The position numbers and the translations under genes are program-made. Under the pieces are notes generated by a model. The model searched no databases and was not told the DNA's origin. It saw nothing but the letters and a program-made list of their open reading frames with translations. Shown in pieces: positions 1,505 through 43,437 of a stretch of 64,000 nucleotides of DNA. How positions within the stretch are numbered: position 1 is the stretch's first letter; every line of letters starts with the position of its first letter. Origin of the DNA: Thalia democratica (lineage: Eukaryota); the NCBI GenBank assembly GCA_965202585.1, contig OZ241833.1, positions 30,938,001 through 31,002,000 on the forward strand, given 5' to 3'.

Positions 1505-1680
1505 GGCTTCACCAAGATGGTTGATCGCCTGGTTACATCCGGGCGTGTGTTGTGCGATCTGAAGATTTCCGCCAAGGAGCTGATAAGGTGCAAGAGCTAC
1601 GACCTGACCACTCTGGCGCAACATGTTCTCAACCAGGGACGCATGGAGCTGAAACCGGAACTCGTGCCGTCCATGTACAA
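1505..1680 (+). CDS. POLA1: POLA1 exon A ([34 protein letters not shown]...SMY)
   Basis: catgcag acceptor, AA|GTTTGT donor; [12 protein letters not shown] motif. Confidence 0.92.
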
Positions 1681-4600
1681 GTTTGTGTGGTTTTTGTTTA
1701 TTGAAAATGAACTTTCAAACTAAATAAATATTTTTTATGTTGTTTGTACAAGTTTGTGTGTTTTTTTTTGAAACTTAACTCTAAGGTTGTTTATATGTTT
1801 GGTTGTATGATCTTCCTGTGTTCGGGCTTTTGTCTGTGTAGTTTTCTGGATACAATTTAATTATCAGAAAATGTTTAGCTGCATGTAAAATAAAATGAGT
1901 ATAAAATGCTTAAATTTAAGTTAAGATGTACAAAAAGTTTTTTAAATAAATATAATTATCTTAAAAAAGGAATTTGATATCTAAAGTAAACTTAAATATG
2001 TCTTTGCAACTATGAATTATTTTTTAGACCTTTGAGTTTCACTAGTTTAATCTTAAAGACTGTAATTAAAAGGTTTTTGTTTTATGTTTATACTGTAGTA
2101 TGCAATTGTAAGATAATTAAAGAAAAGTCAGTAAAAAATGTAAAATTTTGTTTTTACCAATAAAGTTGATGACATATTATGGACCACAAAATAAAAACAT
2201 CATAAGTACAATAAAAGTAACAAAATACAATAAAAAATCTCATTTGAAAGTGAATAAATTAAATTATACAAAACTGACTGAAGAGCAAAGTTCTTTATGG
2301 ATAAATTAAAATTTAAACTGAAAAGACAACAGTTGAAATATTTTATAACAAATTAAAACTTACTGTTTCATTATTTTATTGTCAAATAAAAGTATCTTGT
2401 GATATGATTTTTAAGCCAAAATATGTAAACTTTAAAGATTGCTGATCAAATAAAAAAACTCAAGCATATTATGCCAAAACAATATTTTATCATGATAAAT
2501 CCAAGCCAGTATAGTGTCTGTTATTGAAATTAATTTTACAGTTTTGACAAAGGCTTGTTAAAGAAAAGTTTTATTTTAAGATATGAAGTTGCTTAAGTAA
2601 TAAATCATCAGGTTTAAACCACAATGCAATCAGTCAACAGTATATGTAGTTTGAACAAACTTTTTAAACTAAATAAATAATGAAAAAATCTCAATGGTAA
2701 AACATTGTTCACTAAAAAAATATATATAAAAATAGTTTAAAGTGAATACTTGATAAATATTCTTTAATGTAAATCTCAATAAACTGAATAAAATTTAAAT
2801 GAAAACAGTTTATATATCTATGAAGTTAAAGTAAAATCATTTGATTAAAGTACTTATAAACTTGAAAGAATTAAGTTACTGAAAATATTTTTGTTTGAAA
2901 TTTTTAGCAAATCAATGTATCATGAAATTTAAAGTGGTTCATTCATGAAGATAACTGTTATAAGCTGTTGGCAATGAAAATTTTTTTTTTTGAAATAGCA
3001 GCACAAAGAAAAAAAAATTCTAAGATAATTTTTTAAAGTCTATTAAAACTTACATGATACAGATTAAATCGGTTTTTTGGTGTGAATTTTTAATAAATTA
3101 ACAAAAAAAAAGCACTTGAGCCACTTTAAAGTGTAAAGATGGCTCACTATTGAAAATTTAGGAAGCCTGTAATTGTTTTCAAGTTGGCCAAACTTGTAAA
3201 TTAAATTGATTTTCAAGTATAAGTTGCTAGTGCGTAAATTGCTGTGATTTATAACTCTTTAGATTTTTATTTGAAACAGCAGCGCAAAGATTAATTAGTA
3301 CAAGTTAAAATCACACAACAAACTTGTGAACTATAATAAATTATTTTTTCATTTTTTATCTTGAATGTAATAGTTTAGCTTTAACATTTTAATGTCAGCA
3401 TTTTGAAACAGTATAAAATCATACTTTAGGTGTTAAGCTTTAAAAAAATAGTAGATTACAACATTAGAACAATTATTTTTTTGTCAATTCCTCTTTAAAC
3501 AGAAATGATGTTCTTGTGGTATTCACAATCTCAGGGTGGTTATTCGAAAATCCTGCGAATTTGTATTACACATTTATATACAGCGGACAAATTTTATTTA
3601 ATTGGGAATTAAAAAAAAATATGTATTGTTATGTAAAGAGTAAAACAATACGTCTAAAATAATACTTAACTAGAGAGTTTAGAACAAATAAATAAGACAC
3701 AGTAATCTATCCACTAATAGGAGATTGATAATTAATAATTTATTATTTTTGAGAATAAACAATTACTCAGTTTCACCGCAGAGCGGATTTTCAAATTGTA
3801 AATCTGTAGTAAAATAATAATATTAAAAATGACAAATATTTAGAAATTGGTTTGAGTTAAGCTTATATAAAAAAAAATTTAAAAAAAATAAATAAAAATT
3901 AAGAATAATATTAATGTAAGACAACCTTTAATTTTAAAACTATCAAATTATAGTCTACAAACAATACAATTAAACCATAGTATACTGTGGGGTATTGATA
4001 TCTAATGGATTTAAAGAGATAAAAACTTTTACAGAGTTAGAAGTTATGGAGTAGTATATACATATTATTAAGCACACAGTTCTAATAATAAATTAATAAT
4101 GTTCAAAATAAAACCAGGGAGTAAGCATTAAAAAATTTTATGAAAGCATTGTTGTTGTTATTGTTAACACAGATGTATTATGATGACAAAGTATAAAATG
4201 GCTTTTTGTGAAAAATTTTAGATAAGCAACAAATAGAATGAAGGTTAGATTTCAGATGCTAAATTTAAAAAATAAGATAAACATTGAATATATTTAGTTG
4301 AGAGATAATCAAAGAGAGTATAAACTACTAATAATTCAACTCAAGAAAAAAAAAAAAATAAATTATAATATATGTACTAATTCTCCAATAATTATGATTT
4401 ACAACTGGGAATGGGTATATTATAATGTATGCACAATTTATCTTATATCTTAATAGAATATATTTAACTAATCAACAGACTTGAAAAAATAAAAATAAAA
4501 TAGTTTTAACAGTTTAAGACTGAGGATGGGAATAGTATTATAATACATGCACAAATAATAAAATATTTTAATATAATTGATACCTATGTGAGTTATAAAT

Positions 4601-7600
4601 TATAAATATTCATTTAAGTAATGTGGGCATTGGGTTATCAGTTCGTTTCTCTTGTTTAAGGCTTTTCTTTTGTCTGCTAGGGCTATATGGAGTCTTTCTA
4701 GGTTACATAAAGTGCACATGTTAGTATGGTTTGAGTTAGATTTTACTGATTCTACTATTTTCCATTCAATTGAGTATTTTATTTGGTTACTGTATAGATC
4801 CCATAGATGATTTGCAAGTTGGGTACAATTTTTGGGTTTGCTTTTAAAAGGTTTTGGGAAAGAGGTTTTGTGTTCATTATATCTGGACTTGAATGTTCTT
4901 TTGGTTGAACCAATATAAATTTTATGGTCATTTACGGATGTGGAGACTTTAGCTTGATATATTACATTACTTAGGCAACACTTGTTATCAACGGGGCAGT
5001 TTGTTTTTATTCTACAATTACAAAGTTTTTCGTTTTTATCTGATTTTTTCGTGAGTTTTTTGTTGTGGGAATTTATAAGGGCCATAATATTTGGTGTGCA
5101 GCAGTATGATATTTTTATAGAATTTCTGTTGATTATTTTATGATAGATGGTGTCTTTTTTAAAATGTTTATCTACTAAATCCAGGAAAATTTTGCCAATT
5201 TTAGTCTTTACAGATTTACAGAAGGGGGGATTGTAATAAATGCAATTTCTTTTTCTAATTTTGTTAATGTTTGTACTATTAAATTGTTTGTAGGTTAAAT
5301 TATATTTAAAATTACTTTTATTTAATGCGTTTTGGTATAAGCCCTTGATGTTATTAAAAACTTCTTCATTTTTAGATAGTTTGCATAATCTTTTTTCAAT
5401 CATTTTTGGTATATTGTTACGTATATTTTTAGGGTGGTTGGAATTGTTGTTGATGTAGCTAGTTTTGGAATTAGGTTTACGGTAGGGACTGTAGGTGTTT
5501 AGGGATAGGTCCAGGGAGACGTCAAGAAATTCTGTGCTAGTGTTGCCAATATCTATTGTAATTTCGAAACCTATTGAAGACATTTTTTTATAAGGGACTT
5601 TTTAATTTTTTCAAGTGTGGTTCCAGAGGATTGTTTTATGATTGCAAGACCATCATCTCTATATAAGCCTATATTTGATGGGCCTGTGATTGGGGATATT
5701 TCGCTTAGGATGTATAAGCCTATTAAATCGCAGACCTCGGCGCCCTGGAATGAACCCATAGCTATATCAAAGTTATTGTTATTTGTTTTTTTGGTCCAGA
5801 TTCTGTTGTCATAAAATATAATGGTTTGGCAAGTGTGCATAAGGGTGTCTATTTCTTGTTTGTTGAAGGTTGTGTATTTTTCTGCAAATTTAATAGCTTT
5901 GGTGAGGTGTTCTTTTTTTATTGAAGGATAAAAATTTTTTATATCAAAATTAATGAAGCATTTATGGGATTTATCATTGAAATTATTGAACCACTTTATA
6001 ACTTCTTCAGAATTTAACCATTGGGTAAGATTTGATTTTGATCTTATTTTGTCAATGTGGGTTTGTAAATTTATTTTAGCAATTTTACCAAGAAAAGATT
6101 TTGATGGGTTGATTGTTCTGCAACTAATGTTATGGGGGAAATTAGGTTTGTGGTCCTTGACAGTTATGAATGCTTCAGCTTTGAGGAACTTGGGAATCTT
6201 TCTATTTTTTGTATTTTTTGTATTATAGTTGGATAATATTTTGGTAGCTTCTTCATTAATTTTAATTGTTGGATCATTAGGTTTTATTGAATATTCACTT
6301 GTTAAATTATTAATAAGTAGTTTATACTCTCTTTGATTATCTCTCAACTAAATATATTCAATGTTTATCTTATTTTTTAAATTTAGCATCTGAAATCTAA
6401 CCTTCATTCTATTTGTTGCTTATCTAAAATTTTTCACAAAAAGCCATTTTATACTTTGTCATCATAATACATCTGTGTTAACAATAACAACAACAATGCT
6501 TTCATAAAATTTTTTAATGCTTACTCCCTGGTTTTATTTTGAACATTATTAATTTATTATTAGAACTGTGTGCTTAATAATATGTATATACTACTCCATA
6601 ACTTCTAACTCTGTAAAAGTTTTTATCTCTTTAAATCCATTAGATATCAATACCCCACAGTATACTATGGTTTAATTGTATTGTTTGTAGACTATAATTT
6701 GATAGTTTTAAAATTAAAGGTTGTCTTACATTAATATTATTCTTAATTTTTATTTATTTTTTTTAAATTTTTTTTTATATAAGCTTAACTCAAACCAATT
6801 TCTAAATATTTGTCATTTTTAATATTATTATTTTACTACAGATTTACAATTTGAAAATCCGCTCTGCGGTGAAACTGAGTAATTGTTTATTCTCAAAAAT
6901 AATAAATTATTAAAATAATACTTACTAAATCCAACACTTGAAATGGAAAAAGTTATAAATATAGTTTTACAAAATTTTCAGATGTTTCAAACCTTTTTCT
7001 CCTCGTGTTTATCCCGTGCGCTTCTTTTAAAATTCCAACACATAAACCCGTCCAATCTTATTCAATTGGCGGACCACACGCGTTTGCGGAATGATACACA
7101 CTTGAAATTAAACACGTTTACATAAATTTGCAAAATTATCACAGGGTTGCCACTTTACCTGCAAACCTGGAAAATCCTGGAGTTTGACAATTTACGCAAA
7201 AAAAAACCTGGAATTTTAACAATTTTCACATGTTCAGTAGTAAAATTACCATTTGAATCAAAAAATCTATCATATAAATAAAAAAAATTTGTCATCAAAA
7301 AATTTTTTTTTATTAAAAAATATATTTTAAATAACTTTACAGTATCTTTTCAATGTTTTTATACTATTTAACACAGTTTCTTACCTTAAACTTAACTTTA
7401 AACTAAAAATAGACCCAAAAATGTGTACTGTTAAAAACCTGGAAGAAATTAGGAAAGCCTGGAAAGTTTTTAAAAAACGAGTGGCAACCCTTTTATCATT
7501 AAATTAATTTTTTTTAAACTAAATTGTTTCTCAGAAACCTGAACAGTCTCAAACAGTTGGTGGACAACATGTTTTACACACTGTTATTAACTTTTATTCC

Positions 7601-10600
7601 GCAGAAACCTAAACAGTCTGATACAGTTGGTGGACCACATATTTTACACACTATTTTATTAACTTTTATTCCGCAGAAACCTAAACAGTCTGATACAGTT
7701 GGTGGACCACATATTTTACACACTATTTTATTAATTTTTATTCCTCAGAAACCTGAACAGTCTGATACAGTTGGTGGACCACATATTTTACACACTATCA
7801 TTAATTTTTATTCCGCAGAAACCTGAACAGTCTGATACAGTTGGTGGACCACATATTTTACACACTATTATTAATTTTTATTCCGCAGAAACCTGAACAG
7901 CCTCATACAGTCAGTGTACCATAGTATTTTACACACTATTATTAATTTTTATTCCACAGAAACCTGAACAGTCTGATACAGTTGGTGGACCACATATTTT
8001 ACACACTATCATTAATTTTTATTCCGCAGAAACCTGAACAGTCTGATACAGTTGGTGGACCACATATTTTACACACTATTATTAATTTTTATTCCGCAGA
8101 AACCTGAACAGCCTCATACAGTCAGTGTACCATAGTATTTTACACACTATTATTAATTTTTATTCCACAGAAACCTTAACAGCCTGATACAGTTGGCGGA
8201 CCACATATTTTACACACTATTATTAATTTTTATTCCGCAGAAACCTGAACAGTCTCATACAGTTGGTGGACCACACTTTGGTGGACGCCAAGCTCGCGTT
8301 GGACCTCACGTGCGAGCTTCAAGCCCTGCCACTCGCCCTGCAGATAACCAGCATTGCCGGTAAGCATGTGTATATATTAGATTTTAATAAATTAGTTGTG
8401 GAAAAATTAGGAGTAATGTTTTTGAAAATAATTTAATATTCCTGCCACTTGCTCTGCAGATAACCAGCATGTTGTTTAGGTTGTTGAAATTTCAATATGC
8501 TTTCTAATTAAAACGAGCAGTAGTGCATATTACAGTTTAGTTTATAAACTTGCGGAAGTAACAGAGTTCTTTAAAGGTAAAAAACAAGTCCAGAGGTAGT
8601 TTGAAAAGCTACATGTTTAAGATCCAAACAAATATTTTATGAAAACTTTACAGACTGTTTACCACGTTTTATATGAGGTTGTAACAATCAAATAAAATAT
8701 TCTTTAAGAATAAAGTGTATAAAATTGTTTAAATACCGTTGTTTATAAATAGTATATTTCTTTAAAATAGCAATAAAGTTAAAAAATACTTCGACGATTT
8801 TATTGGCTTTACGAAAGGCAATTAATGCTTAATATTCTACGTTCAAGTCTGTTTGATACAAACCTTGTATTCGTGTGTGCAACTACATTAGCTTAAATGG
8901 AATATAAATGCATTATTTAATTATTAGCTTAATTAAACTACATTGGATCAACAGGGAACGTGTTGTCGCGTACCCTGATGGGAGGCAGAGCCGAAAGAAA
9001 CGAGTTTTTATTACTCCACGCCTTCCACGAACTTAGCTACATTGCGCCAGAAAAAAGTAAGATGTTTTGTTCAGTTTCGTTTAATGTTTGAATAATTTAT
9101 TTTGTTTATTGTCACCCTAATAAAAGATGTTTGTCATTTTTTCAAGAGAATTTAAAATATTAAGTCATTTAAAATATTATCACTTTTTAAAGAAGGATTT
9201 TCGATTTATTAAAATTAAAGAAAATTGTTTAATTGTGAATTTTTTCCTTAAACTAATAAATAAGTATATATATATGAAAATAACATAGTATAAGTGTTTT
9301 GAAAACATTTTTAGATGTTAGTAGTTAAACAAATTAATTTAATATTGCTTTGCAAAATAGTTAGGTCTTTAAAGGTAAAGTTAAAAATTTCTTTGTTAAA
9401 CTGAATAAGTAGTGAGTAAATGTGCATTAATTAGATTATGAAAATTAGTTTTCTTTATTTCATTCAACAGTTTTTAAGAAGAAAGAAACGAAACAAGACA
9501 CAACGAAAGCAGGTAAAAATTTACACAAAATATATATTTAAAATATAGAAACACCTGGTAAAAATTTTTGTAAAGTTTTTCAAGTAAAGTTTGACAGCGT
9601 AATTAATAATAAAATATTATACAGCGAAATAAGTAAATTAAAACCGCAGAAAAGTTTTACAAAATGTTCAATTATGTTCAAAATCGTGAAAAAGTTTACG
9701 TGAGCTGTTTATTACAAATAATTTAAGTGAATAAAATACGGTAGAATTTTATAAAAACTAAAAATAAAAACTTTAAGTTTACAAGAAACACAGAAAAGTT
9801 TTAAATGTCTAGAGTTTTTTTGTTCAAATTACGTCAATTTTAGAAATTTCTATGCGCTTTAAATAGATTGATTTTTCAAACCTTGAGAAGACATCAAGGA
9901 TAAAAAAATCTTTGAGCCTGTTCATAAATCGAGGGAAAGTAAATTCTAAACAAAGTTATTAAAGCTATTTTGTAAGTTTTATTTCGGCAAATATTGCCAA
10001 GTAAATCTTAAAATAAGCAAAAGTTTGTTGAAAATGTCAACAAAAAAATAAATACAAACTTCAACATTATTGAAAATTATTCAGGTGATTTACGCCAAAA
10101 AGTTTGCTTAAACTCTCAGCGAAATTATTCAAAGGGGGATAAAAAAAAATTCAGTTTTTTTTTCAATGACGAATCGCGGAATTTCCATTTTAAACTCTGT
10201 GACTCACGCAGAAATTTTCCACTTTTTTTTTCTTCGAAGGATTTAAAAACGCTTTTTGCGTCAAAACTGGAATTTTTATTAATTTTCTTGAATGTGGGTT
10301 TGTTTACCCGACTTGTAGAGTAACTGAATCGAACTCTGAAAATGCTAGTTGTATCCAAATTATGTTGTGATTTAGTTAATCGGTTTAGAGCTGAATATAT
10401 ATTTATTTCTGTATATAACTATCGGTAAAACGTTATCTGAAAAGTTTAAACTGAAACTGTTTGATTGTTCATCTTTTTAAATACAAGATTAAATAATTAT
10501 AAGCAATGAATGTAAAATTTAATGTTTTGTGTTTTAGTGTTTTATTATCCAATTTAGCTAACTTTTGGCCTAATATACACTATAATATTTTATTTTAGTA

Positions 10601-13600
10601 GTTTATCATTGAAAAGCTTTTGTAATTGCTTTATAAAATACTGAAAAATGTATGTATGTATCTTAGAAATTAAATATATAAGTATTAAATATTTACTTGC
10701 TAATTTTTAAAGTAATTAGTTTTATAGCTTGTTGAAAATTAGAACATAACATAACCTAGACAGACACATTTGAAAATAATTTTTTTTAAAAGTAAGTTAT
10801 ATAAACTTTTAGGTAATTTAGTTTTATTTATAAATTTAAAACAACTTTTGCAATAGTCGCGGAAATGTCATGTTATTGAAAAAATGTTTTTATGAGCTGA
10901 CAGCTGACTTAAGAATATTCAATTGTAAAAAAGCTTGAATAAACTTCCATAAATAATATTTTAAAAAACAATTAAAAATCTGTTAAAACTTTTTGTTTGT
11001 GGTTTTATAAAAAAAGGTTTTAATTTTGTAAATTAAGAAATTGTTGAATATAATACAAGTGTTAAAAAATTAAAAGTAGGTTGAAAAATGTAATACTTAT
11101 GATTTATATAAAGCTCAAAAATGAGTTATTTCTATATTTTGAATTAAAAAAACTGACTAGATTTCAAAAGTCATTTTAGTCTATAATAGTATGTTGTAGT
11201 TTATGCTTTAATCTTTAATTTTTTTTGTGAATCCCCTATGACCTTCAAAAGTTAAGTATAAAAAAATATTTTTCTCAAGAAACAGGTAATGCTTAAAAAA
11301 AACCCGTTTTTACCATATGAAAATGACCTTAAACAATAAACTTTAAAATCAAGCTGTGTATTTTACATAAAATAAAAAGTAATTTTTTATAAAATTTAAG
11401 TACCTAAATTTTTATGAATCCCCTATGACCCTAAAAAGTTTAGTATAAAAAAAAATTTTACAAGAAACAAAGCTTTAAAAATAAAATTACCAATCAAATA
11501 ATATTTTTACCTTAAATGAAAATGGCCTTAAACAACGAGCTGAACATTTTACATAAAAAAAAAAGAAAAAAGAAATATTTTTTTATTTCAAGTATTTTCA
11601 CCCGCAGGAAACGCGGGCAAGCCGAAGAAGAAGGCGGCGTACGAGGGGGGTTTGGTGCTGGCCCCCAAGAAGGGTTTCTACGACAAGTACATCTTGCTGC
11701 TGGACTTCAACTCCCTGTACCCGTCCATCATCCAGGAGTACAACATCTGCTTCACCACGCTGGAAACCAACCCGCCCGAGGGGCACCCCGAGGTTGGTAG
11801 GGAGTTGGTTGTTGTTGGGGAAGTTTGGGTGTTGTGAAGCGGGTATGGTACTTTTGTGTCGGGGAGTTGATAGACTTTGAAGCAAAAATAAATTTTGGTT
11901 AAAAAATCATAAAATGAAATGAAATTAATACTATTAATTTAATTTTAAATGCAATATTAGTCTGCAACTTATGTTTGTTGGAATGTGAAAAATAGAAAGT
12001 TCTAGTTATGATGATTCAAAAACTAAAAGTACAGTAGATAATTTATAAAAAAAAAGTCTAATAAAAAATATCATGTTATATAACAATATATGCTTATTAC
12101 TTGATGTATTTGATTAGATTGTATTGTTTTTAGGTAATTAGTAAAGTAAGAATTTATTTTTTGAGAGATATTGTATAACAAAGTAGTACATATTCAAATA
12201 AACAAAAAAAGCATTACTTAATTTTAACATAGGACGAGTTGTACATCCCAGAGGTTCCGGAGCAGGGTCTCGACGCTGGAGTTCTTCCGACTGAGATCAG
12301 GAAGCTGGTTGAAAGAAGAAGGGCAGTCAAGCAGATGATGAAGGGACAGATCAGCAAGGAACAGTATACTCAGGTGATTAGAAAAAAATAAAATAAAATT
12401 AGTAAGCAAGTGATGCACAACATTAAAGGGTAATAATAAAAGCAATAATTTTGTTGGAAGTTTACAAGTATTTGTATAAGATAATAGATAATAAAACAAA
12501 CTAAAAGTTGAGTTAGGTATATGCTTACTGTAAAAATAAATTTAAAACCATTTTGTTTTACTCGGTCGTTAATTTCACTATCATCATTGTTCATTTCATA
12601 ATTTTTTGTGAAATGGTTAATTTATTTATATTCATATCCACAGTACAAAACCCGTCATAAAGTGTTGAAATTTTCCTTCAGACTTGAGTCTTATTATCAT
12701 AATTTTAAAATTCCAGTTCTTCATGATTTTCCTGAAGTATTTTACTTATTACAATACATTTCCACAGTGTATTGTGATAAGTTGAGTCAGACGGGTGTCT
12801 AATGTAAAAATAAATTCAAAACCGTTTTGTTTTATTAAGTCGTTAATTTTTAATTTTAAATAAAATTTTAATAAAATTTAATTTTTAATTTGATTCATGT
12901 CCACAGTACGACATCCGCCAGAAAGCGCTGAAGCTGACCGCCAACTCGATGTACGGCTGCCTCGGCTTCCAAAACTCCAGGTTCTACGCGAAACCCCTCG
13001 CGGCCCTGGTCACCAGGAGGGGTAGGGAGGTGAGAATTGCTGTAAAATATTTGGTTTTTATAAAAAAAAACTGGTGGAACAGTTTAAAAATGTTCTAAAT
13101 AAGTCTATAAGGTACTTGTGTATTATGCTGAATATACATTTAAAACATTTTCGTAGTTTTGTCAGTTTCAAGATAAATAAAAGTGTTTAACAAGAAGTAA
13201 ATTGAGTGATAAGAAGCAGTTTTACTTGTACTTAAACTTATTTGCAATTTTTGTATAACTCAAAAGGTCTTATGGTAGTGAAAGTGCTTATATATACTTT
13301 AATCTCTACAGTTGCAATAAAAAATGCCACACAAATGGTACACAAAACATAAATTGCTTTTGAAATCGAGCATATTTCAGACTTCCTATATGGAAGCATA
13401 ACTTTTTGTTTTCCAAGTGTTAAATAAGTTAATTTAAGTTCAATTAATTCTCAAATAAATTGTTACCCAATATAAAAACGTGATGAGTAAATTGAGCTTC
13501 CTTTTTCAATCACGATCAACTTTGCTAATTTCAATCTAAAATGTTGGAAAATTAATGTTGCAATCAAATATCACCTCGGGATGTATTCAGCTTGTGTATA

Positions 13601-33094: not shown

Positions 33095-33762
33095 CAGGGT
33101 TGCCAAATTAAAATTAACAACAAAGCTGAAAAAACCTGGAATTTGAGAAATATTGAAGAAACCTGGAATTTTGAACAAAAGTCACTAAAAACTCTGGAAT
33201 TTTTAGCAACTTTTACATAAAAGCTTATAATTTTTAGATTTAATACGAAAAATCAATTATACAAAAATCAATTTTATTTTTTTTATTGAAAAACACGTAT
33301 AAAGTAGCTTTAAAGCAGCTATTCTTAACCTTGGGTAAATTTACCTCTGGGGGTGAATTCCCTTGTTTTAGGAGATATATTTTCTTTATTACAATTTATG
33401 CAAGTTAGTGTTTATCAATTGTTGTTTTAGTTTATAAGTTAGTGTTAAAATTAAATATTTTTTTAGGTGTTATGATTAATAAGCTTAAAGTTCAAAAAAT
33501 CAAGTTTTTTTTCCTTAAAACTAAACACTATATTGTTAATTTAGGGTAAATTTGGTAATAAGCTTCCAATAAGGGGTAAAAAACTAAAAAAGGTTAAGAA
33601 CTCCTCCTTAAAAGTATCTCTTCAATGTTGTTAAACTATTTAAGACCGTCTTTTACCTTAAATTTAGTTTTGTACCAAAATGGGTCAAATTTTTTTTATT
33701 CCTAATCTGGAAGAAGTTTAGAAAACCAAGAAAAAAACTTCAAAAAACCTTTGGCAACCCTG
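33095..33762. mobile_element. CAGGGTTGCCA-TIR MITE containing a nested insertion
   Basis: cagggttgccaa / ttggcaaccctg TIRs; aacctggaattt repeats shared with the 7142 copy. Confidence 0.75.
33315..33606. mobile_element. hAT-type MITE nested in the preceding MITE
   Basis: cagctattcttaacc / ggttaagaactcctc degenerate TIRs; 8-bp TSD ctttaaag / cttaaaag. Confidence 0.7.
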
Positions 33763-36700
33763 AAAAATTAAACATCAAAATATATTTTTGAGCTTTTTCA
33801 GCTAGGCATTAACAGTAACATAGGGGTACAAACGATGTCACGAAAAATCTGATGGTTGGACATTGTAAGATCAAAACCCACTAGTCGACATAGCAGCAAA
33901 ATCTGCAAGTAACAAGAAATGTTTAACATAACTTGAAACCCTCTGTTGTATGTATTAGACTTGAAAAGAATAAGTTTCAAGTCTGACATAGTAAAGCTAA
34001 GCATTAATTAAATTCAAATGACTATCAATTTTGCTTGCACTTGTTTACTAATAACGTACAAAAACAATTAAAACTACTAACAATTAAGTTTGTTGTGTAA
34101 GCAAAAAAAGGTTTATTAATTAATTGATTTGCAAAAAAAAGTCATCTTGCCATCTTTGAAGTTTGACAATGAGTTTTTTGTTGTTAGAGAAAAAATGTAT
34201 AATTCAACACCTTATATCATTTTATAAAAAAATAATAGACGAATTAGCTTGCTTTTACTGTTTTATTAAGACAATGGGTTAAATAATATACCAAAAGGCA
34301 CAAAACTTGCTAACTAAAACTATACTGAAACTCAGAAAATGTATTTTTACGTATAAATATCTCAGGTTGTAAAACTTTGATAACATAGTTACTTATGTGG
34401 TTATATAATTACAAACAAGATTTTTTTTTAACAGCTTTTGTATAAGATATTTCAAACACACTAATTGTAAGAATTTCTGTTAGTTTACCTGCTAAAACAT
34501 TTAACACAGCTAGTATTAATTAGCATATTTTTTACCTTGAGCTGTTATATTTTCGAATAACAATTTTCAACGATGCTAAAGCATTTTGATATAGAGTTGA
34601 AACTAGTATCTTTAAAACAAAAAGGAAATCATAAACAAATCAAGAACAACTCACTTTTGAGTTAAAAAGAGTAAATTAATTTTTATTAGGATTGCTTGTA
34701 GAGTTTTAAATAAGAATTTGTGTTCTTCAAAGTTCTTCAAAGTTAAAAAATAAATGAAATAAATTTCAACAAATTTAAAAGGATTCATGACTAGAATTTA
34801 GACTTTAAAAACGAACTTTATTAGTCAGCTTAAAAAGTTTTCTTGAATTTTTTTTACCAACTAGTAAGAAGCCAACACTTATTCTATTAGAAAACACATT
34901 GCAACACACAGCGAAATCAAAACAACCTAATGTAAATAAAAAATTGAAAAACTAAACGATTATTGATTTTTTATTCGTAAGCTTATCGGTTAAATCGCGT
35001 CGCTTTGATTATAGATAATTTAGTAAAACAATTCTACGAAACCAAAAACATGTGATTATTGTTACAAGTAATATTAATGTTAAATAAACAATTGTATAAT
35101 GATAAAAAAATCCAAGCACAGTATAACTTCCTTTTACGTATTTGATTAATCAGTGTTCTTCTTATTATTAATTGAAACCAAACAGTTGTCTTAACCGATT
35201 TGATTAAAATTAAAAGCTTTTCTAAAAAGAACACATAAAAGCCGAGATCTCTCAAAAGCTGTTTTAATGCTTTGCTACCTGATTTTGATAAAGCAGAACT
35301 TTTAAAGTTCTTTTTGAAAAACTAGTTTTCAACCCTGAGCTTAGTTTCAAAAAGTAACAGACAAATTAAAAGTACGAGCTTAGTTATTAGGCTATAAATT
35401 CTTGTTTTATTTTGTAGCAAAGGTATGTTTTGTTTACTTTAGAATACGTTTAAGTGAGTGAAAACATTAAACTTAACTTAATAACTTGATAGGAAGATTT
35501 GCAATGAGAGCCTTTGCATTCTAAGAAGTACAAAAATAACAAAGTTTATTACGCTACTGTCATAAAATAAGTAAACAAAATTACAAGAGTTTAAATTTAT
35601 GTTTGCGCAAAATTTATTATCAGAAAAAAAAACAATGATTCATTCCAAGTCATTATCAAATTATCTTAAATGCTATATTTTGAGCTCTGTTTGACTTATA
35701 TACTTCTGAAACTAGATCGATATTTATAGTTTAAATGCATAATATTGCTGAATTAATTCGATCGCTTTTTTCAAGCTCTATTTAAAATCTGAATAAATTT
35801 GACATGACCATTGAATTTAAAACATCTCAAGCTAGTAGTTTGCTAAAGCCTGATGATTGTACTAGTTTATTATACTATACTGACGAAAAAAAAAACATGT
35901 TTCTAATTCAAGACTATAAAAACGTCAATTAATTTTGTATGTTTAGTTTAACAGTGATTGAAAAGTATAAGAAAATACGGAGGTTTTTTGTTTTATTGCT
36001 ATGAATGATTTTATTAGAATTAGAACTATGACAAACGCGAATAAAAAAAGAATGCGTACGGTCTACGGGAAATTTCAACTTATAGTAAAACACAAGTAAA
36101 AGTTAATTTTTCTAAATTTAGTCAGTCAAATTCGAAGAATTGATATAATCGCTTTTATTAATATTGATTTTGTTTTTATATGAATATATATATATAGTAC
36201 AAAACGCTGCAACGCAAGCTTCATTCCCATTGCAAGAGGTAAAGGTAGTACGCTTTTTTTGTTTAAATAAACAAGCTCAAAAAAGGACTGCTGTAAATTA
36301 AAAACCGGTGAGTCTGTAAAAAGTTTTTTTTTTTGTTAAATAGTCCTACTTGAGTATTTAAGTGTTCGGTACGAAATTAGAAAACTTTTTTTCAGCTTGT
36401 CAATATAACGATGTTTTGTAAAAATTTAAAATTACGATATTTTGAGCTGCGCTGCTGAAGTGAAGCAGTCGTGTGATAATTAAAAGCTTTTGCATTCAAA
36501 TGAACTACCGCTCAAGTAAGAAGCAGGGCTAGCCTGATCACAACTCAAATTTTGTTAAATGCAAACATCGTGTTGCAACATGTGTGCAGCAATTTCAAAC
36601 AAATGCAATTTTAATATAGAGTGTATTTTTGGAATCTGTCTGTCAGTATTAGTTATAGTGAAAATAGTAATTTATTTCCAACTAAACGACCTTTGAACTC

Positions 36701-39700
36701 ATCTTTTTAAAATATCAAAAAAAATTTCGTTCTTTTTTACCAGGTGTAAATATTTAAAACTAATATTAAACAGTTAATAACGACCATTTTAATTGAAAAC
36801 AAGTTAAAATGATCTTATATTAACTTACATACCTCACTTTTTGATGCGCTATTTTTGACCTTAATCTATTTATTTAGTTAAAACAGATCGTGATCAGTTT
36901 AAAAAGTATAAACAATGGTTTATTTGTATACTGTTTGAAACATTTAGAAACAGAGCGTTCGTTTCAAATATTCGACGAAATGTATTCAAATCATTGGCTG
37001 TCGTTAGGCTTATCTTAACGGATACACTGTTTGTTGAAACTTTGATACAGGCTTCCATGCTTGTAGAAGTCAAAGTAAAACGTAGAAGTAGCATTCTAAA
37101 AATTAGAAAAAAAATTTAACTGGATTAAATATTTGGTTAAAACTTTTTTTTTATCAGCTGAAATTTTTAAAATTGTTTTTTAAGCAAACTATAGAGAAAG
37201 TAAAAAACATTTTGTACTTTTAAAAATTTGTAACAGACTAACCAATAAAGATCTTGTTTTAGGCAACTGAAAAAAGAAAGGATAAAGTCCATTGGTAACA
37301 CACTTGTGTTAAAACCCTGATCAGTTATTTTGATAACTCAATTACTTCATGCAACATTTAAAGCACTTGTGAAAAAGAACCCTTGTAATTCACGCGAATG
37401 GCATTCATAACTTTCTCTTTCTACACGAAATATGAAAAAAGCCCTTTCAAGTACCTGTGATCTCGTGAAAAGCGAAAACTCATCATTTTCACTTATCTGA
37501 GTGCTCAAAGTTGCCGTGATAAACTTGTACGTTGATCATTTTTGAAAATGTTTTGCTTAATAAAGACATCACTATGCAAAAGCATAACAAATGTAATTAT
37601 TTAGTTTTTTTTTAAGGCTACAATTTATAATAAAATATGTGATACTTTAGTACGACTTTTGTGTGTTTTTTATTATGCAAAAATAAATCAAATTAATTTG
37701 TTGTATCTACATGATATTGTTAACAGACGGTTAAAATTCGAAATTGTTGATAAGGAAGCATACGTGTTCAAAAATGTTATGTTGTAATTAGCATTTACAA
37801 AGAAATTGTACTCAAAAAATTAGTTTTGACAAGTTACGATGACTTTTTACTAGGTAAGAAAATATCTCGCGGGTTTAAAAGATCTGTACAATATTTCAAT
37901 TTGTTTTTTTAAATCTACCAAGTTGCTAGTTTTACTTTACTTCAGTCCATAACTCCATGAATCTTAGTCTACAATCTATTTGAAAAATTTTTAAAAGGTT
38001 TAAAACTTTTACTAAATTGCAGCGGTTATAGAACTAAGAATTCTGCAAATTCAGTAGATGTTTATTAAAATGTTTAAAAATGTGTTGAGAACTTAAAACC
38101 AGCTTAGAAAACAAATAAAACATGCATTAATTAGATTTTTGTTTAAAGAAAACTTGACTTTGGTACTTACTAATTAGCATTCATAAGACTTGTTTTTCAA
38201 TTAAAACTTAAAATTAGTATTTGAACAGTAAATATTGGTTGATTACTTATTAACAGTTCAAAACTTTGTCTAAACAGTTTGTCTTAATAAAGCTATGAAG
38301 CTTGGAAAAATCAGTTTGTGTTAACTTTTTTACGGTACAAAGTCTATGATAAGTAGAAACGTTCTAGTTAGTGAAATCAAGTTTGAGCTTTACAGTTTTT
38401 TAATTTTTAACAGACACTTAAACTATCTCTAAGAATAACTGCGTTGAATGAGTTTTAAGTAAATTCATCTAAATAAGAAAAAAAAAAGCTTAAACGTATA
38501 GAATGACAGTTTTATGATTAAAGTAAGAAAGAATACAGTGTGGTTTTGTTTTTTAATTTCCTTTTCCGAGAAAAACACAATCCAAAAAGACTTTCAACTT
38601 TTCCAGTAATAGTGTGTTTTAACAAGACAAAGACTTTTTGGATAGACTTACCGAGAAAATATATCTTAAAACCCGAGCTTTTTAAACCTGTTTAAACCCT
38701 GGGACGCGTGGAAAAAGTGGTTTTTAATGTGAGTTTGCATAATGGTTTCAATTTACACCGTTTTGATCGAAGCGTACAACCAAGTCTCATTTGAAACTCG
38801 TGACGAGATTTGTATGCGAGGAAATGTACGTTGTCAAGTTTACTGTCCGAGCCCATAGTGATTTTGATAAATCGTTTTAATTCGCGCAAATTACACCGAT
38901 CGAACCAGCATTGTTTTGTTGTACGCGTGGGTGTTGTAATTGGCTACAAGTTTTCTTATAAGAAGATGCTAGTACTTGTTAGATCGCATAACAATTACGT
39001 TCGATTGAGAAGTGTAACAAAATGACCTGGTATAACACATACGTAGTCTTTAAGCTTTATATATATACTGTTTTGTGTGATGTTTTTGCTTAGCTTTGTT
39101 TAATTAATACTAAAAAAATTGTAAACAAAAGTTTCAAAGCTTTAATTATTATATTGATTTCAAATCTGAGATACAGCGTTTGTGTGAGATTATATATTAA
39201 TACATATTTATTTTGAATATATTTTTTAATGAGGTAAAACCATATTGGAATTGCTTACGGTCGTTTAACAGCTTGTCAGAACGAAAAATGAACTACTAAA
39301 AAAAAATTGTTAGATAAATTTTTATGGCAGTGACTAATATAAAATAAAACTTTGTAAGTAAAACCTAATAATTTGTTTGAAAGTATTTACTATATGCAAA
39401 TTAATGTTTTTTTAAATATGCGTTTTTGCTATAGCCTTTTATTGTCTTTTAATTATGTTTCTAATTTCTCCAAGCTCCAGAGTTCTACCGAGTATTTTTC
39501 ATTCTAAGTTTTAGTTTGTGTCTTACAAAAAGATCTAGCTCAGAATAATTATTAGTGTTTGTTTAAATAGAATTACTTTTTGTCTTCCGTTGAAGCTTGT
39601 TTTATAATTTAGGCATCCATCCTTGAATGGTGTACTAGTTGAGTGTAATAATTTTATTTCTCGTACAATTAATTAAAAAAGACCAGCCTGTATTTACAAA

Positions 39701-41393
39701 TTTTTGTTTTACCTACAAAACGATGACAACATTTATATCTGTTTATACTCAGTCTATAAACTATTTTTTTGTTTTAATTAGCCGAGAAAATATTGAAGCG
39801 ATAGTTAAAACATAGTTAAATTTTATTAAAACTAAACATTTAACTACTGGAATAGCACAATTATATAGAAGTACTATGAACTCAACCATTAATAAAAACA
39901 ATTCATAATCTATTTATACATTTAGTTATAATGACGCAAATAAAAATAAAGTGATACTAACATCTTAGTTTGAATATAGTGTTTATTGAATGATGGTAAA
40001 AAAAAAAAAACAAGTTTAGCTTAATTTACGAATAAATAGATTAACCAATTAAGTTATCAATAAAGGTTATATGCCTGTTGCATTTATATATATTGAAAAC
40101 ATACTTTAAACTTACTGAGTTAATTGCGTTTGTTAGTTGAGTAAAGTCGAGTAAGAACCATCTTACTAATTAGTTCAACTCTGACACATACTTGTTATTA
40201 TTATTATTGAGAAACATTCAGCTCAAACTGATGCATCAGCAAGCATAAATTTTACGTAATTAGAATTAATTGTCACCAACGTAACAGAGTTTAATTATAA
40301 CTGTTGTTTTTGTTTTGCAAGCGCTATGATTAACACTTCTGCTGGTTTATTTGCAACGAAATAAAAAATAACTTTATTTTTAGCTTAAGTTTGAGCTTTA
40401 GGTACAGACAGTAAAAATAGTATAGTGTTAGTTAAAAAACTTGAAATTTCAAGTAATGATTGTTTTTAAAATTCTTTATACAAAAGTATTGCTGTGTACA
40501 AATAAGAAAACAGGTTAAGTAGGTTTGAAAAAAAATTGTTCGGTGAAAGTTCATAAACTGTTAAAAAATTAAGTTTTTAATAAAAGAGTTTTAAATAAAG
40601 AATGCTAAAAAAACGATGCTAAAGAAGTAATAGAACGTCAATTGTAATAAAAAAATCTTTAACAAGAAATAAAACTTCAATTTTGCTGCGCATGTAGTTT
40701 TACAGTAACCGGTTAAAAGTTAAAACAATTAGTTCGTTAGGAAGTTAAGACCTGCGTGATTAAGACTGAAATAGAAAAAAATTATATTGTTATAACACGA
40801 AACAAACGGTCAAATGGTTTTCTTTAGCAAATAACACAGCTTGTTGATAAATTGATCAATACAAACAGCAAATTGAGAGAATTTTTGCTCAGCGCGTGAA
40901 TCATTGCAAATTAAATGAGGAAACCGTATAATATTGTAGCTGCTTGTTATGGTTATTTTATTGATAGTTGTTCAGCGCAATTAATGGTATTAATTAGTTT
41001 TCTTTCTCACATTGTGCTTAGTTGCTAGACTGGTACTTGCTACGAAGAGCAGTTCCAGTAAACTTTTGTTTGTGCGTAGAGTTGTGTTGATTTTTTGTTA
41101 ATTAAAAAGGTTGCAATAATGTTTGCAACAAAAAAGGTAGTTTTTGTTTAAAACTAGTTTGGACTTTTTTAAAGTTTATTAATTTGTCAGTTGAGTTTTA
41201 TTCGTATAATTATAAATATTCCGATAATTTTTTCAAGCGTAAGAAAAAATTAGAATAAAAAAATTTTAAATTTTCAATCAGAAGCCTTTTTTTTTTGAAA
41301 AATTGTAAAAGTTTTATGCTTAGTTATATACCAGTTTTAACAAGGATTTTATTTCTGCCTTAATATTCCAGGGAAAATAATTTTCACTGTAAA

Positions 41394-43437
41394 ATGTCAA
41401 ATTTCGGAATCGACAACATTTTGAACCAATCACGTCAGAGAATGATGAATTTTGGACCAACCAGAGATCGGGGAGATCATATGAACAACATGATGGCTTA
41501 CAGAGGGGGATTTGTTCAAGGTATATAAAAAAAGAAACAGTTATTGATATATTAATGTATAATAAAAAACTTTTGTATGACATTTTAAAGTTTTTATTTC
41601 AAAATAGGTTTAAGTTCGTATTAAAGTAAAACAGCTCCGTTTTACAAAAACAAAATAGGAAGTTGTTTGCATGTCTAATGAACTACAATAAGCAGTTTAG
41701 AGCTTAAGTAAAAGTTTTTTTTTAACTAAAAGTTTAAGTTTATTTAGAGTTTGCTTTAGTTATAATATAACTAGCTGTCCCTAAGTCGGTAAGTATATTA
41801 ATTTTAATTTTTATTAAACTTTAAATTAATTCGGCAAACTTTTACATTTAGAACATACATTTATAACTCCTTTATTTCGCACAAAACAAACTAAAAAAAC
41901 AAATCCCGCAGCTTTCCAACGGGACCAGAACGTCGTGAGGCCCTCGAAGCCGAAAGAAGAGCAACCGGCTCACAACAGCAAACCTCTGTACTTGAAGGAG
42001 GAACCGACGAACTGCAAAAAGTTCGACAGCAAACACCTCAACGAGGAAATTGTCAGAATCAGGGAGGCGCTGTTCAAGCGCAACCACCGGGACGCCCCCA
42101 ACCTGATACCGAGCAATCGTCAGCGCCCGGAAGAAGCCGAAATCGATTTGAAGCCGGGCTTTCGCTTCGACGCCGAAAAAAGAGCGAAAAGTTTGATTTT
42201 CGGGCAGAAAATAAGCGGTGTCAGGCCGGCAGCGACGGCGGAGCACAAAAGCCATCAGCAGGAAAAAACATGGCCGCACGCCGCTAAAGACGATTTTCGC
42301 CGGAGGCCGGAACAGAAGACGCCGCCGAGGCTGTTGTTCGACTGCAAAAAGGAACTTTCTCCGCAAAACTCCTCCACCGCAAACCAAGAGCTCCTCCACC
42401 TGAGCCTGCAGAACCTGTACGCCAAGAACAAGGAGAAACCCGAAATGTTCCCTCCTTCCTTTCGCCAGTCTCCAAAAAGTTTCGCCAGAGGTGCTTCCCC
42501 GGACGGTTATGGCGGGAGATTGGAGGACCTGCAAACTCCTCCGAAGAAGAACCGCAGGTACAGGACCACTTTCACCTCCATGCAGCTCAACGACTTGGAG
42601 GGGGAGTTTCAGAGGGGCCAGTACCCTGACATTAACAGGAGGTTGGTTGCACCTACTACATAGTAATTTTTTTATGTGAAACGTTAATTTTTGAATCCAA
42701 GTACTTTAGTGAGCAACCGCTATACTCATAAATTGCTAAAGTTAATTTAAAGCGGCATAAGCAGTAAAAGCTACCTAAAAGCTATATTTTTCAAAACTTA
42801 AAGCGTTTACACAATTTTTTCATAAACTCGAATACAATAAACATTTTAAAAATCTTCGTTCAACCAATAAATAAAAACTAAATAAAAATGTAGATTTGTC
42901 TAAATTACAAAAATGCAACGTTGTTTTTAGAACAGTGTTATTTTACTATGTAAATAATTTTTAAAGTAATCAATCCAAGCAAACGCAATTATTACAATGA
43001 TAATTAAAATAAGTGATTTCTTCAGAGAGGAGTTGGCCAGGAAAACAGGTCTGACGGAATCCAGGGTTCAGGTGTGGTTCCAAAACCGCCGCGCCAAGGA
43101 GCGCAAAACCGTCAAACAAACTCGGATGTTTCACGGGGGATTTCCCCTATTCGCAACCACCCCCTTCTACCAGCAGCAGATTGCCAGGGCGACGGCGAGT
43201 TACGGGGTCCAGCCGCAGTTCGCCCCCACTCCCTACCAGCACTACCTGGGGGCCCTGTGCGCGTTGCTAAGGAGCCACGTGAATCCCCTTCAGATGATGG
43301 CCTCGCAGAATTTCGGTTTCCACGGCAACCAGGCGAGGGTAAGCCCCCAAATGTTGCAGCAGATGGGGCTGCAGAGACCCACCTCAGATTTGAAGGAAAT
43401 GGTTCAAGAAGTTGTCAGGAGTAAAGAGGATAACTGA
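41394..43437 (+). CDS. arx: Paired-class Q50 homeobox gene, Arx/aristaless-like; exons 41394-41520, 41912-42641, 43026-43437
   Basis: N-terminus [10 protein letters not shown] (eh1/octapeptide); spliced homeodomain [30 protein letters not shown]|[27 protein letters not shown]; the phase-2 intron at R|EELA matches a vertebrate ARX intron position; exon phases are consistent. Orthology not tested by phylogeny; no clear OAR motif. Confidence 0.78.

What the first reader, a model, noticed from the sequence alone, without database searches (positions are those of the whole stretch)
1505..43437. POLA1 directly upstream of an Arx-like homeobox gene: possible ancient genomic regulatory block outside vertebrates
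Seen: POLA1 ends at 32231 and the next gene, ~9.2 kb away, is an eh1 + Q50 paired-class homeobox with the Arx-type RRYRTTFTS start and R|EELA intron. Established: in human and mouse ARX neighbours the 3' end of POLA1 (tail-to-tail) and ultraconserved ARX enhancers lie in POLA1 introns. Here the genes are head-to-tail, so Arx would be inverted relative to vertebrates yet still linked. Inference: cis-regulatory constraint has preserved the pair in this fast-evolving invertebrate.
Basis: partly seen in the sequence, partly recalled or inferred. Interest (0 to 1): 0.78.

Follow-up and report, generated by a model that had tools for sequence, protein, structure and literature searches.

The report
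Arx-like homeobox gene beside POLA1
In this tunicate genome a divergent but working relative of the brain-patterning gene Arx sits 9 kb behind the DNA polymerase alpha gene, as in vertebrates; the pairing was probably inherited from their common ancestor, but a regulatory reason for keeping it is untested.

Summary
POLA1 (+ strand) ends with its stop codon at 32231. The next gene, 9162 bp on and on the same strand, is a three-exon homeobox gene of 422 aa (41394-43437). A metatranscriptome contig confirms its splicing, and dN/dS is 0.23.

I read the gene as a divergent Arx:
- It has an N-terminal eh1 motif, a Q50 paired-like homeodomain and the Arx/aristaless arm RRYRTTFTS.
- Its homeodomain intron splits codon R31 in phase 2. 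Pufferfish arx and Arx-type genes of a clam and a bryozoan have the same intron. Fourteen other paired-class genes lack it.
- The genome holds no better Arx candidate.

Against this, the gene lacks the OAR domain and the 46/47 intron, and homeodomain trees are unresolved.

With the same look-up tool, pufferfish POLA1 shows arx 4.4 kb downstream, tail to tail. POLA1 of amphioxus, an acorn worm, a sea star, a clam, an annelid and a sea anemone shows no homeobox within 10 kb.

The linkage therefore looks shared by tunicates and vertebrates rather than ancient across animals. I could not reach other tunicate genomes. Nothing here tests whether regulatory DNA holds the pair together. The scan had not reported this on other DNA.

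The parts
1505..32231 (+). 3' two-thirds of POLA1, the DNA polymerase alpha catalytic subunit. About 19 exons were detected. The gene starts about 7.8 kb before the window.
   Evidence: tblastn of amphioxus POLA1 (P0215) gives colinear blocks from residue 734 at 1505-1678 to residue 1461 at 31012-31182. Pfam DNA_pol_B hits 11652-11837. The C-terminal exon and stop are shown.
32040..32231 (+). Last coding exon of POLA1, with stop codon TGA at 32229-32231.
   Evidence: Frame translation ...[34 protein letters not shown].
32232..41376 (.). POLA1-homeobox intergenic region of 9.1 kb. No gene was detected. High-copy repeats lie at about 33000-33800. The rest is single-copy sequence.
   Evidence: ORF and GC scans. 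Contig depth profile in four runs.
41377..41520 (+). Homeobox gene exon 1. At least 17 nt of 5' UTR, ATG at 41394, and the eh1/octapeptide motif FGIDNIL.
   Evidence: Sequence. mRNA contig L014 block 1-144 aligns to 41377-41520.
41912..42641 (+). Homeobox gene exon 2. A low-complexity linker and homeodomain residues 1-31 ([30 protein letters not shown] + AG of R31).
   Evidence: Pfam Homeodomain positions 1-30.
42642..43025 (+). Homeodomain intron in codon R31, phase 2 (AG|gttggt...ttcag|A). This is the Arx-type position.
   Evidence: The same position and phase occur in Mya ARX-like, Takifugu arx and the Watersipora RRYRTTFTS gene.
43026..43437 (+). Homeobox gene exon 3, coding part. Homeodomain residues 31-60 ([27 protein letters not shown]; Q50, E56) and a C-terminal tail without OAR. 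Stop at 43435-43437.
43438..43910 (+). 3' UTR of the homeobox gene, as far as the mRNA contig reaches.
   Evidence: L014 block 873-1756 aligns to 43024-43910.
17400..17790 (.). Single-copy GC-rich (47%) non-coding island in a POLA1 intron. It is a candidate regulatory element only.
   Evidence: GC scan. One genomic copy. No Rfam hit. Fold z-scores 0.04 and -2.2.

Best explanation
The gene at 41394-43437 is this tunicate's fast-evolved Arx (aristaless-related) orthologue.

What it is. It encodes a transcription factor with an N-terminal eh1 motif and a Q50 paired-like homeodomain. In other proteins the eh1 motif recruits Groucho/TLE co-repressors, and such homeodomains bind TAAT-type sites. It has lost the C-terminal OAR domain and one of the two Arx homeodomain introns.

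Why it sits there. Its place directly downstream of POLA1 is inherited from the common ancestor of tunicates and vertebrates. Only the orientation of Arx has flipped, from tail-to-tail in vertebrates to head-to-tail here.

Shown: the gene model, its expression and splicing, purifying selection, the Arx-type signature and intron, the adjacency, and the vertebrate arrangement.

Inferred: orthology, and descent of the linkage.

Likeliest reason for retention, but untested (about 0.35 absolute): Arx regulatory DNA lies in the intergenic region or in POLA1 introns, so breaks between the two genes are selected against.
For: Gene is real and constrained:
- The spliced mRNA contig matches all junctions.
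- dN/dS is 0.23, with no non-synonymous change in the homeodomain.

Arx identity:
- In an exhaustive HMMER search of 1.84 billion representatives, 48 of the 82 single-homeodomain proteins among the hits fetched up to then carry the R-[YF]-RTTF arm. Most of the closest are aristaless/Arx proteins at 66-72% identity.
- Among solved structures, Drosophila Aristaless scores 84.5 bits. The next single-domain families score 75.9 (Paired) and 74.8 (ALX4).
- As a control, the genome's Pax3/7 gene correctly hits Paired and Pax-3 first.
- The intron in codon R31, phase 2, is identical in Takifugu arx, Mya ARX-like and a Watersipora RRYRTTFTS gene.
- That intron is absent from 13 other paired-class genes of this genome and from one Styela gene.
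- The eh1 motif lies in exon 1, as in Arx.
- No other Arx candidate exists. The rivals are Pax3/7 (L002, with paired-box exons just upstream) and Phox2-like (L003).

Linkage:
- Takifugu has POLA1, then arx 4.4 kb downstream on the opposite strand.
- uc467 lies in the last POLA1 intron next to ARX (PMC1964772). ARX enhancers lie between ARX and POLA1 (PMC8955779).
- The chance that the single Arx-like gene falls within 10 kb of POLA1 is 20 kb/802 Mb, about 2.5e-5.
Against: - Homeodomain trees are unresolved. The window's homeodomain is not placed with Arx. The AU test gives p 0.06-0.14 for an Arx+window clade, and Phox2 or Pax3/7 placements fit as well.
- Identity to Arx (66-72%) is barely above identity to other paired-class families.
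- No OAR domain was found. The 46/47 intron is missing, and position 56 is E instead of W.
- AG|R is a proto-splice site, so an independent intron gain at R31 cannot be excluded in a lineage with intron turnover.
- The linkage was not found within 10 kb of POLA1 in six non-tunicate invertebrates, amphioxus among them.
- The older PCYT1-POLA1 pair is broken in this genome, which shows local rearrangement.
- No second tunicate was examined.
- There is no evidence at all for enhancers or conserved non-coding elements.
Confidence: 0.68

Rival explanations
1. The gene is Arx and the adjacency is inherited, but it is a neutral leftover. The 9 kb simply has not been broken, and no Arx regulatory DNA depends on POLA1. 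This rival shares orthology and inherited linkage with the best explanation, so its confidence overlaps with that one rather than adding to it; it differs only on why the pair persists.
For: - Nothing in the window demonstrates regulatory elements.
- Arx has been inverted relative to vertebrates, so the region is not frozen.
- The neighbouring ancient PCYT1-POLA1 pair was lost.
- A few ancestral pairs are expected to survive by chance.
Against: - Tunicate genomes are heavily rearranged.
- Irimia et al. report that the retained pairs in tunicates are enriched for developmental-regulator plus bystander pairs (PMC3514665).
- In vertebrates, ARX enhancers do lie in and next to POLA1 (PMC1964772, PMC8955779).
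Confidence: 0.3
2. The gene is not Arx. It is a lineage-specific, fast-evolving paired-like gene, for example derived from a Phox2-, Pax3/7- or Prop-like ancestor, that lies by POLA1 by coincidence. The R31 intron was gained independently at a proto-splice site.
For: - Homeodomain trees do not place it with Arx.
- The motifs LEGEF and QYP(D/N)I are shared with other divergent paired-like genes on the same chromosome: L003 at 8.3 Mb, and L128 and L129 at 30.0 Mb.
- OAR and the 46/47 intron are absent.
- From my own recollection of the PROP1 sequence, identity to PROP1 (about 65%) is close to that to ARX (about 67%). This is not a tool result.
Against: This reading needs three independent coincidences:
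- the Arx-specific arm with Tyr4;
- an exact intron position and phase;
- adjacency to the one gene that flanks ARX in vertebrates. Joint chance is well under 1% even allowing for about 40 paired-class genes.

The same-chromosome paralogues keep the 46/47 intron and lack the R31 intron.
Confidence: 0.12
3. The gene is Arx, but the adjacency arose independently in this lineage by convergent translocation next to POLA1.
For: Amphioxus and five other invertebrates show no homeobox within 10 kb of POLA1. The orientation differs from vertebrates.
Against: An independent landing within 10 kb of the same gene has odds of about 2.5e-5. One origin in the tunicate-vertebrate ancestor plus a local inversion is far more parsimonious.
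Confidence: 0.03

Closest known systems
Vertebrate ARX-POLA1 locus, a regulatory block with ultraconserved ARX enhancers in and next to POLA1
   Same: The same two genes are immediate neighbours. The POLA1 3' end faces the homeobox gene across a few kb: 4.4 kb in Takifugu and 9.2 kb here.
   Different: - Orientation is tail-to-tail in vertebrates and head-to-tail here.
- Vertebrate enhancers are documented (PMC1964772, PMC8955779). None is shown here.
- PCYT1B lies beside POLA1 in the human duplications listed in PMC8955779, and PCYT1 lies beside POLA1 in Mya and Ptychodera. It is not on this chromosome here.
Arx/aristaless family of paired-like homeobox genes (ARX, Drosophila al, mollusc ARX-like)
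   Same: Q50 homeodomain, RRYRTTFTS arm, intron in codon R31 in phase 2, and an eh1/octapeptide encoded in exon 1.
   Different: - No OAR domain.
- The 46/47 intron and the 15-residue microexon are missing.
- Only 66-72% homeodomain identity.
- Unusual residues G18, E19, N29, R30 and E56.
Conserved ancient microsyntenic pairs of a developmental regulator and a bystander gene (Irimia et al. 2012, PMC3514665)
   Same: A developmental transcription-factor gene is kept next to an unrelated housekeeping gene with many long introns, in a fast-evolving genome.
   Different: - Here the pair was seen only in a vertebrate and this tunicate, not in the six other invertebrates sampled.
- The paper's main text does not mention this pair, and its supplementary lists were not available.

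Membership tests
Arx/aristaless family (PRD class) | Paired-like homeodomain with Gln at position 50 | tested here: met
   WFQNRRAK. Pfam PF00046 hits both halves.
Arx/aristaless family (PRD class) | N-terminal arm RRYRTTFTS (Tyr at homeodomain position 4) | tested here: met
   [13 protein letters not shown]. It matches Arx/al proteins, and 48 of 82 single-homeodomain hits carry the R-[YF]-RTTF arm. Phox2B has I, ALX4 has N, and Pax3 and Prd have S at this position.
Arx/aristaless family (PRD class) | Intron splitting homeodomain codon 31 (Arg) in phase 2 | tested here: met
   Window AG|A. Takifugu AG|A, Mya AG|G, Watersipora acceptor |G. Absent in 14 other paired-class genes.
Arx/aristaless family (PRD class) | Second homeodomain intron at 46/47, giving a 15-residue microexon | tested here: not met
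   Exon 3 runs uninterrupted from residue 31 to the stop. This is compatible with intron loss.
Arx/aristaless family (PRD class) | C-terminal OAR (aristaless) domain | tested here: not met
   No PF03826 hit in the protein or anywhere in the genome's six frames (a low-power search for a 19-residue motif).
Arx/aristaless family (PRD class) | N-terminal octapeptide/eh1 motif | tested here: met
   [10 protein letters not shown] in exon 1, present in the mRNA contig. ARX has SYCIDSILG near its N-terminus. The motif is not specific to Arx.
Arx/aristaless family (PRD class) | Groups with Arx in a homeodomain phylogeny | tested here: inconclusive
   The trees are polytomies. Adding the window's homeodomain costs 1.2 lnL for the Arx clade and 7.3 lnL for the Pax3/7 clade. 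A Phox2+window clade is only 0.2 lnL below the best tree. The AU test rejects none. Prop, Rx, Hbn and Alx1/3 references were not available.
Arx/aristaless family (PRD class) | Only candidate in the genome (reciprocal search) | tested here: met
   Searches with ARX and with the Arx first half find no other RRYRTTF gene. The better-scoring loci are Uncx, Otx, Pax3/7 and Phox2-like.
Genomic regulatory block (target gene plus bystander) | Target-bystander adjacency conserved between distant lineages | tested here: inconclusive
   Present in Takifugu and in this tunicate. Absent within 10 kb in amphioxus, Ptychodera, Patiria, Mya, Capitella and Nematostella. No second tunicate was reachable.
Genomic regulatory block (target gene plus bystander) | Conserved non-coding elements of the target spread through the bystander's introns | not testable with these tools
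   The only other data are short contigs 0-8% divergent, too close to tell. One single-copy GC-rich island at 17400-17790 is a lead only.
Genomic regulatory block (target gene plus bystander) | Enhancer activity and contact with the target promoter | not testable with these tools
   Needs reporter assays and Hi-C/4C.
Pax3/7 | Paired box upstream of an S50 homeodomain | tested here: not met
   No PAX match on chromosome C9. The mRNA starts at the eh1 exon. The homeodomain has Q50. The genome's Pax3/7 is L002 on C5.
Phox2 | Arm QRRIRTTFTS and THYPDIY | tested here: not met
   The window has Y4 and GQYPDIN. L003 on C9 at 8.32 Mb carries the Phox2 signature.

The most novel reading that the evidence does not exclude
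POLA1-Arx is a true regulatory block that predates the tunicate-vertebrate split. Arx enhancers are embedded in POLA1 introns or the 9-kb spacer of this tunicate; the single-copy GC-rich island at 17400-17790 is one candidate. If so, this pair survived in a heavily rearranged genome because it cannot be broken, and a vertebrate disease locus would have a small, experimentally tractable invertebrate counterpart.
Probability: 0.3. Interest if true: 0.65.

Novelty: new member of a known kind. Interest (0 to 1): 0.42.

Why it matters
ARX is a human disease gene, and its ultraconserved enhancers lie in and beside POLA1. Those elements cannot be traced outside vertebrates by sequence.

If the same gene pair is held together in a tunicate, two things follow. 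The linkage dates to the tunicate-vertebrate ancestor. And the idea that regulatory DNA locks neighbours together could be tested in a compact 40-kb locus.

The shared R31 phase-2 intron is also a practical marker. It can identify Arx genes whose homeodomains have diverged too far for trees.

No paper in the searched library links POLA1, ARX and synteny outside vertebrates.

Tried and rejected
- **Styela clava protein P0023.** It turned out to be the counterpart of another gene (L005, Otp-like), not of this one. No POLA1 lies near it.
- **L002 as an alternative Arx.** It is Pax3/7, with paired-box exons 2-3 kb upstream.
- **L003 as an alternative Arx.** It has the Phox2 signature.
- **Apparent Pax3/7 grouping in the first trees.** It was caused by P0010, a row picked from the database because it shares exact words with the query. 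The grouping vanished when that row was removed.
- **Automatic names.** 'RAX2-like', 'Pit-1 prophet-like' and 'Pitx2' proved unreliable. The bryozoan 'Prop-like' gene has the Arx microexon.
- **POLA1 transcript of the close relative.** None was found in the metagenome collection. A jellyfish-like POLA1 ORF (L051) served as query instead, and no tunicate POLA1 was among the 120 hits listed.
- **Laying public contigs on 32000-37999.** It gave only 150-850 nt pieces, so it neither bridges the two genes nor tests a sister species.
- **Irimia 2012 and a follow-up paper.** Their main texts do not mention the pair, and no supplements are held.
- **Other blanks.** Rfam found nothing in the window. The ESM Atlas look-up only said 'homeodomain'. 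PCYT1 is not near POLA1 in this genome. One PDB search repeated by mistake.
Full report
**Setting.** The window is G000:C9:30938001-31002000 of an 802-Mb, very AT-rich genome (about 27% GC, with GC-rich exons). Earlier notes of the scan call the animal an unnamed tunicate. I did not test that myself.

**Observation: POLA1.** Its exons lie on the + strand.
- The exon with polymerase motif A ([29 protein letters not shown]) hits Pfam DNA_pol_B at E 5e-19.
- Amphioxus POLA1 aligns colinearly in 19 blocks. Residue 50 lies about 6.9 kb before the window. Residue 734 lies at 1505-1678, and residue 1461 at 31012-31182.
- The final exon ends ...KVVKTERVN, with the stop at 32229-32231.
- The window has no N. 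No GC-rich ORF lies between 32231 and 41377.

**Observation: the homeobox gene.**
- The next gene starts with ATG at 41394, which is 9162 bp after the POLA1 stop.
- It has exons 41394-41520, 41912-42641 and 43026-43437, giving 422 aa.
- A protein from a JGI metatranscriptome (P0001, 93-94% identical) and its 1756-nt contig L014 align to the window in exactly three blocks at these junctions. The contig carries the eh1 start [10 protein letters not shown] and 473 nt of 3' UTR.
- Between the genome and that transcript dS is 0.126, dN is 0.029 and dN/dS is 0.23. The homeodomain has no amino-acid change.

**Which family? Similarity.** The homeodomain is [58 protein letters not shown].
- An exhaustive HMMER search of 1.84 billion representatives was dominated by multi-homeodomain proteins. 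Of the 82 single-homeodomain proteins among the hits fetched up to then, 48 carry the R-[YF]-RTTF arm. Most of the closest are aristaless/Arx proteins at 66-72% identity.
- Against solved structures, Drosophila Aristaless scores 84.5 bits. Paired scores 75.9, ALX4 74.8, PHOX2B 72.6 and PAX3 68.6.
- This ranking is meaningful in this genome. The locus L002 has paired-box exons just upstream, and it correctly hits Paired and Pax-3 first.

**Which family? Gene structure.** This is the most discriminating evidence.
- The window's homeodomain intron splits codon Arg31 after its second base (AG|gt...ag|A).
- I mapped three Arx-type genes onto their genomic loci. They are Mya arenaria ARX-like (L015), Takifugu flavidus arx (L119) and a Watersipora gene with RRYRTTFTS (L130).
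- In all three, the exon that starts with the last base of codon Arg31 sits at this position. For Mya and Takifugu the donor side was also read, and it shows the same phase 2. All three then have a 15-residue microexon, (R)EELA...RVQV, and the classical 46/47 intron.
- Thirteen other paired-class genes of this genome read straight through position 31 and break at 46/47. They are two Uncx-like, four Otx, Prrx-like, Gsc-like, Otp-like, Pax3/7, Phox2-like and two unclassified genes. Styela P0023 does the same.
- The window gene thus shares the Arx-specific intron and has lost the 46/47 intron.
- Searches of the whole genome with ARX, and with the first half of an Arx homeodomain, found no other RRYRTTF gene.

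**Evidence against Arx membership.**
- No OAR domain was found.
- Positions 18-19, 29-30 and 56 hold unusual residues.
- Homeodomain trees are unresolved.
  - The first trees paired the window with P0010 and Pax3/7. P0010 had been retrieved precisely because it shares rare 5-residue words with the query. Without it, the window's homeodomain falls into the basal polytomy, and its nearest rows by path are aristaless/Arx.
  - Adding the window costs 1.2 lnL for the Arx clade and 7.3 lnL for the Pax3/7 clade. A Phox2+window clade is only 0.2 lnL below the best tree. No AU test rejects any placement.

**Linkage in other animals.** I obtained POLA1 proteins of many animals with a metagenomic jellyfish-like POLA1 ORF as query. 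I then looked at the called genes within 10 kb of POLA1.

| Species | Within 10 kb of POLA1 |
|---|---|
| Takifugu flavidus (positive control) | A 463-aa Homeodomain+OAR gene 4.4 kb downstream on the opposite strand; its exons are arx |
| Amphioxus | EBP upstream, a TLD-domain gene downstream; no homeobox |
| Ptychodera | PCYT1 head-to-head upstream; no homeobox |
| Patiria | No homeobox |
| Mya | PCYT1 overlapping POLA1; no homeobox |
| Capitella | No homeobox |
| Nematostella | No homeobox |

- tblastn with Arx and window homeodomains found no unannotated homeobox exon in any of the six invertebrate loci.
- In Mya the two genes share a chromosome but lie 4.5 Mb apart.
- The look-up reaches only 10 kb, so looser linkage in these larger genomes is not excluded.
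- The vertebrate background is documented. uc467 lies in the last POLA1 intron next to ARX (PMC1964772). ARX enhancers lie between ARX and POLA1 (PMC8955779).

**Other tunicates.** I could not reach them. No tunicate POLA1 was among the 120 listed hits, and all protein searches, metagenome scans and contig look-ups were then exhausted.
- Public runs that hold the region are two of one organism, one of a second label and two marine metagenomes.
- They give only 150-850 nt contigs that are 0-8% divergent.
- These contigs cover the whole spacer piecewise but bridge nothing. The source organism itself shows two contig sets about 6% apart.
- The 93-94% 'relative' may therefore be the same species.

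**Weighing chance.**
- The genome has one Arx-like gene. The chance that it lies within 10 kb of a given gene is 20 kb/802 Mb, about 2.5e-5.
- Suppose instead that any of about 40 paired-class genes could sit beside the orthologue of the flank of its vertebrate namesake. Even then the expected number of such coincidences is below 0.01. This is my own estimate, an inference.
- Sequence signature, intron and neighbour each point independently to Arx. I put Arx orthology with inherited linkage at about 0.68.

**Mechanism.**
- The protein should act as a homeodomain transcription factor with a Groucho-binding eh1 repression motif. This follows from established knowledge of these motifs and was not tested here.
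- Why the pair persists is open. The PCYT1-POLA1 pair is present in clam and acorn worm, and PCYT1B lies beside POLA1 in human. It is broken here: PCYT1 hits lie on other chromosomes. Arx itself has been inverted.
- The region has therefore been rearranged around a preserved POLA1-Arx junction. That fits a constraint acting on this junction but does not prove one.
- Candidate elements exist, such as the single-copy GC-rich island at 17400-17790. They are leads only.

**Verdict.**
- The Arx reading is likely, but not by phylogeny.
- The linkage is most likely inherited at the level of tunicates plus vertebrates, not shown to be older.
- The regulatory-block claim is plausible and untested.
- This is a new member of a known kind of feature, and of moderate interest.

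Noticed in passing
window 4600-6347 (-) and 54714-56603: Penelope-like retroelement ORFs: a reverse-transcriptase-like part plus a GIY-YIG-like end ([17 protein letters not shown]). Pfam gives no hit. One copy sits inside a POLA1 intron, and others lie 11 kb downstream of the homeobox gene.
   Followed up: no
window 7521-8363: Minisatellite whose units read ...[24 protein letters not shown]. It runs directly into the POLA1 exon at about 8254-8361.
   Followed up: no
window 24830-25130: Dispersed SINE-like repeat in a POLA1 intron. There are at least 292 first-look candidates genome-wide, and a 74-nt head is 85-93% identical between copies.
   Followed up: partly
window 17400-17790: Single-copy GC-rich (47%) island in an AT-rich POLA1 intron. 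It shows no coding signal, no Rfam match and no significant RNA fold. Its function is unknown.
   Followed up: partly
window 33000-33800 and 32000-32031: Very high-copy repeats in the POLA1-homeobox spacer. Summed contig depth is up to 1000-fold above the flanks in four independent runs.
   Followed up: no
G000:C9:30015047-30015196 and 30041390-30041545 (L128, L129), 0.9 Mb upstream of the window: Two tandem, very divergent paired-like genes (RRVRTNYTSQQIEVLEAEFQRNKYPNIY..., KRLRTKYTSHQLNFLEGEFQKNQYPNIY...). They share the odd LEGEF/QYP motifs with the window gene and with the Phox2-like gene L003. Their family is unassigned.
   Followed up: partly
G000:C7:36.92-37.51 Mb; C4:36.18-36.71 Mb; C6:69.83-70.22 Mb: Large tandem expansions: more than 20 paired-box (PAX) matches on C7, and two arrays of near-identical homeobox exons, all scoring 60.3 bits, on C4 and C6.
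   Followed up: no
L097 (Mya), L120 (Ptychodera), L119 (Takifugu): A PCYT1-type gene (CTP_transf_like) lies head-to-head with or overlapping POLA1 in clam and acorn worm. PCYT1B lies beside POLA1 in the human duplications listed in PMC8955779. This looks like an older conserved pair than POLA1-ARX, and it is broken in this tunicate.
   Followed up: partly
window -100 kb to -16 kb (L107-L112) and window 57.4-72 kb onward: The upstream neighbour of POLA1 is a giant multi-MAM/LDLa-domain gene on the - strand. Downstream of the homeobox gene lie C-type-lectin and pentraxin/LamG-like exons on the - strand, and a gephyrin-like 628-aa ORF at +92.7 kb. Domain names were read from motifs in the ORF translations, not confirmed by Pfam.
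   Followed up: no
window 32000-37999 in run X1: The source organism's own contigs come in pairs over the same stretch, one identical to the assembly and one about 6% different. This suggests very high heterozygosity.
   Followed up: no
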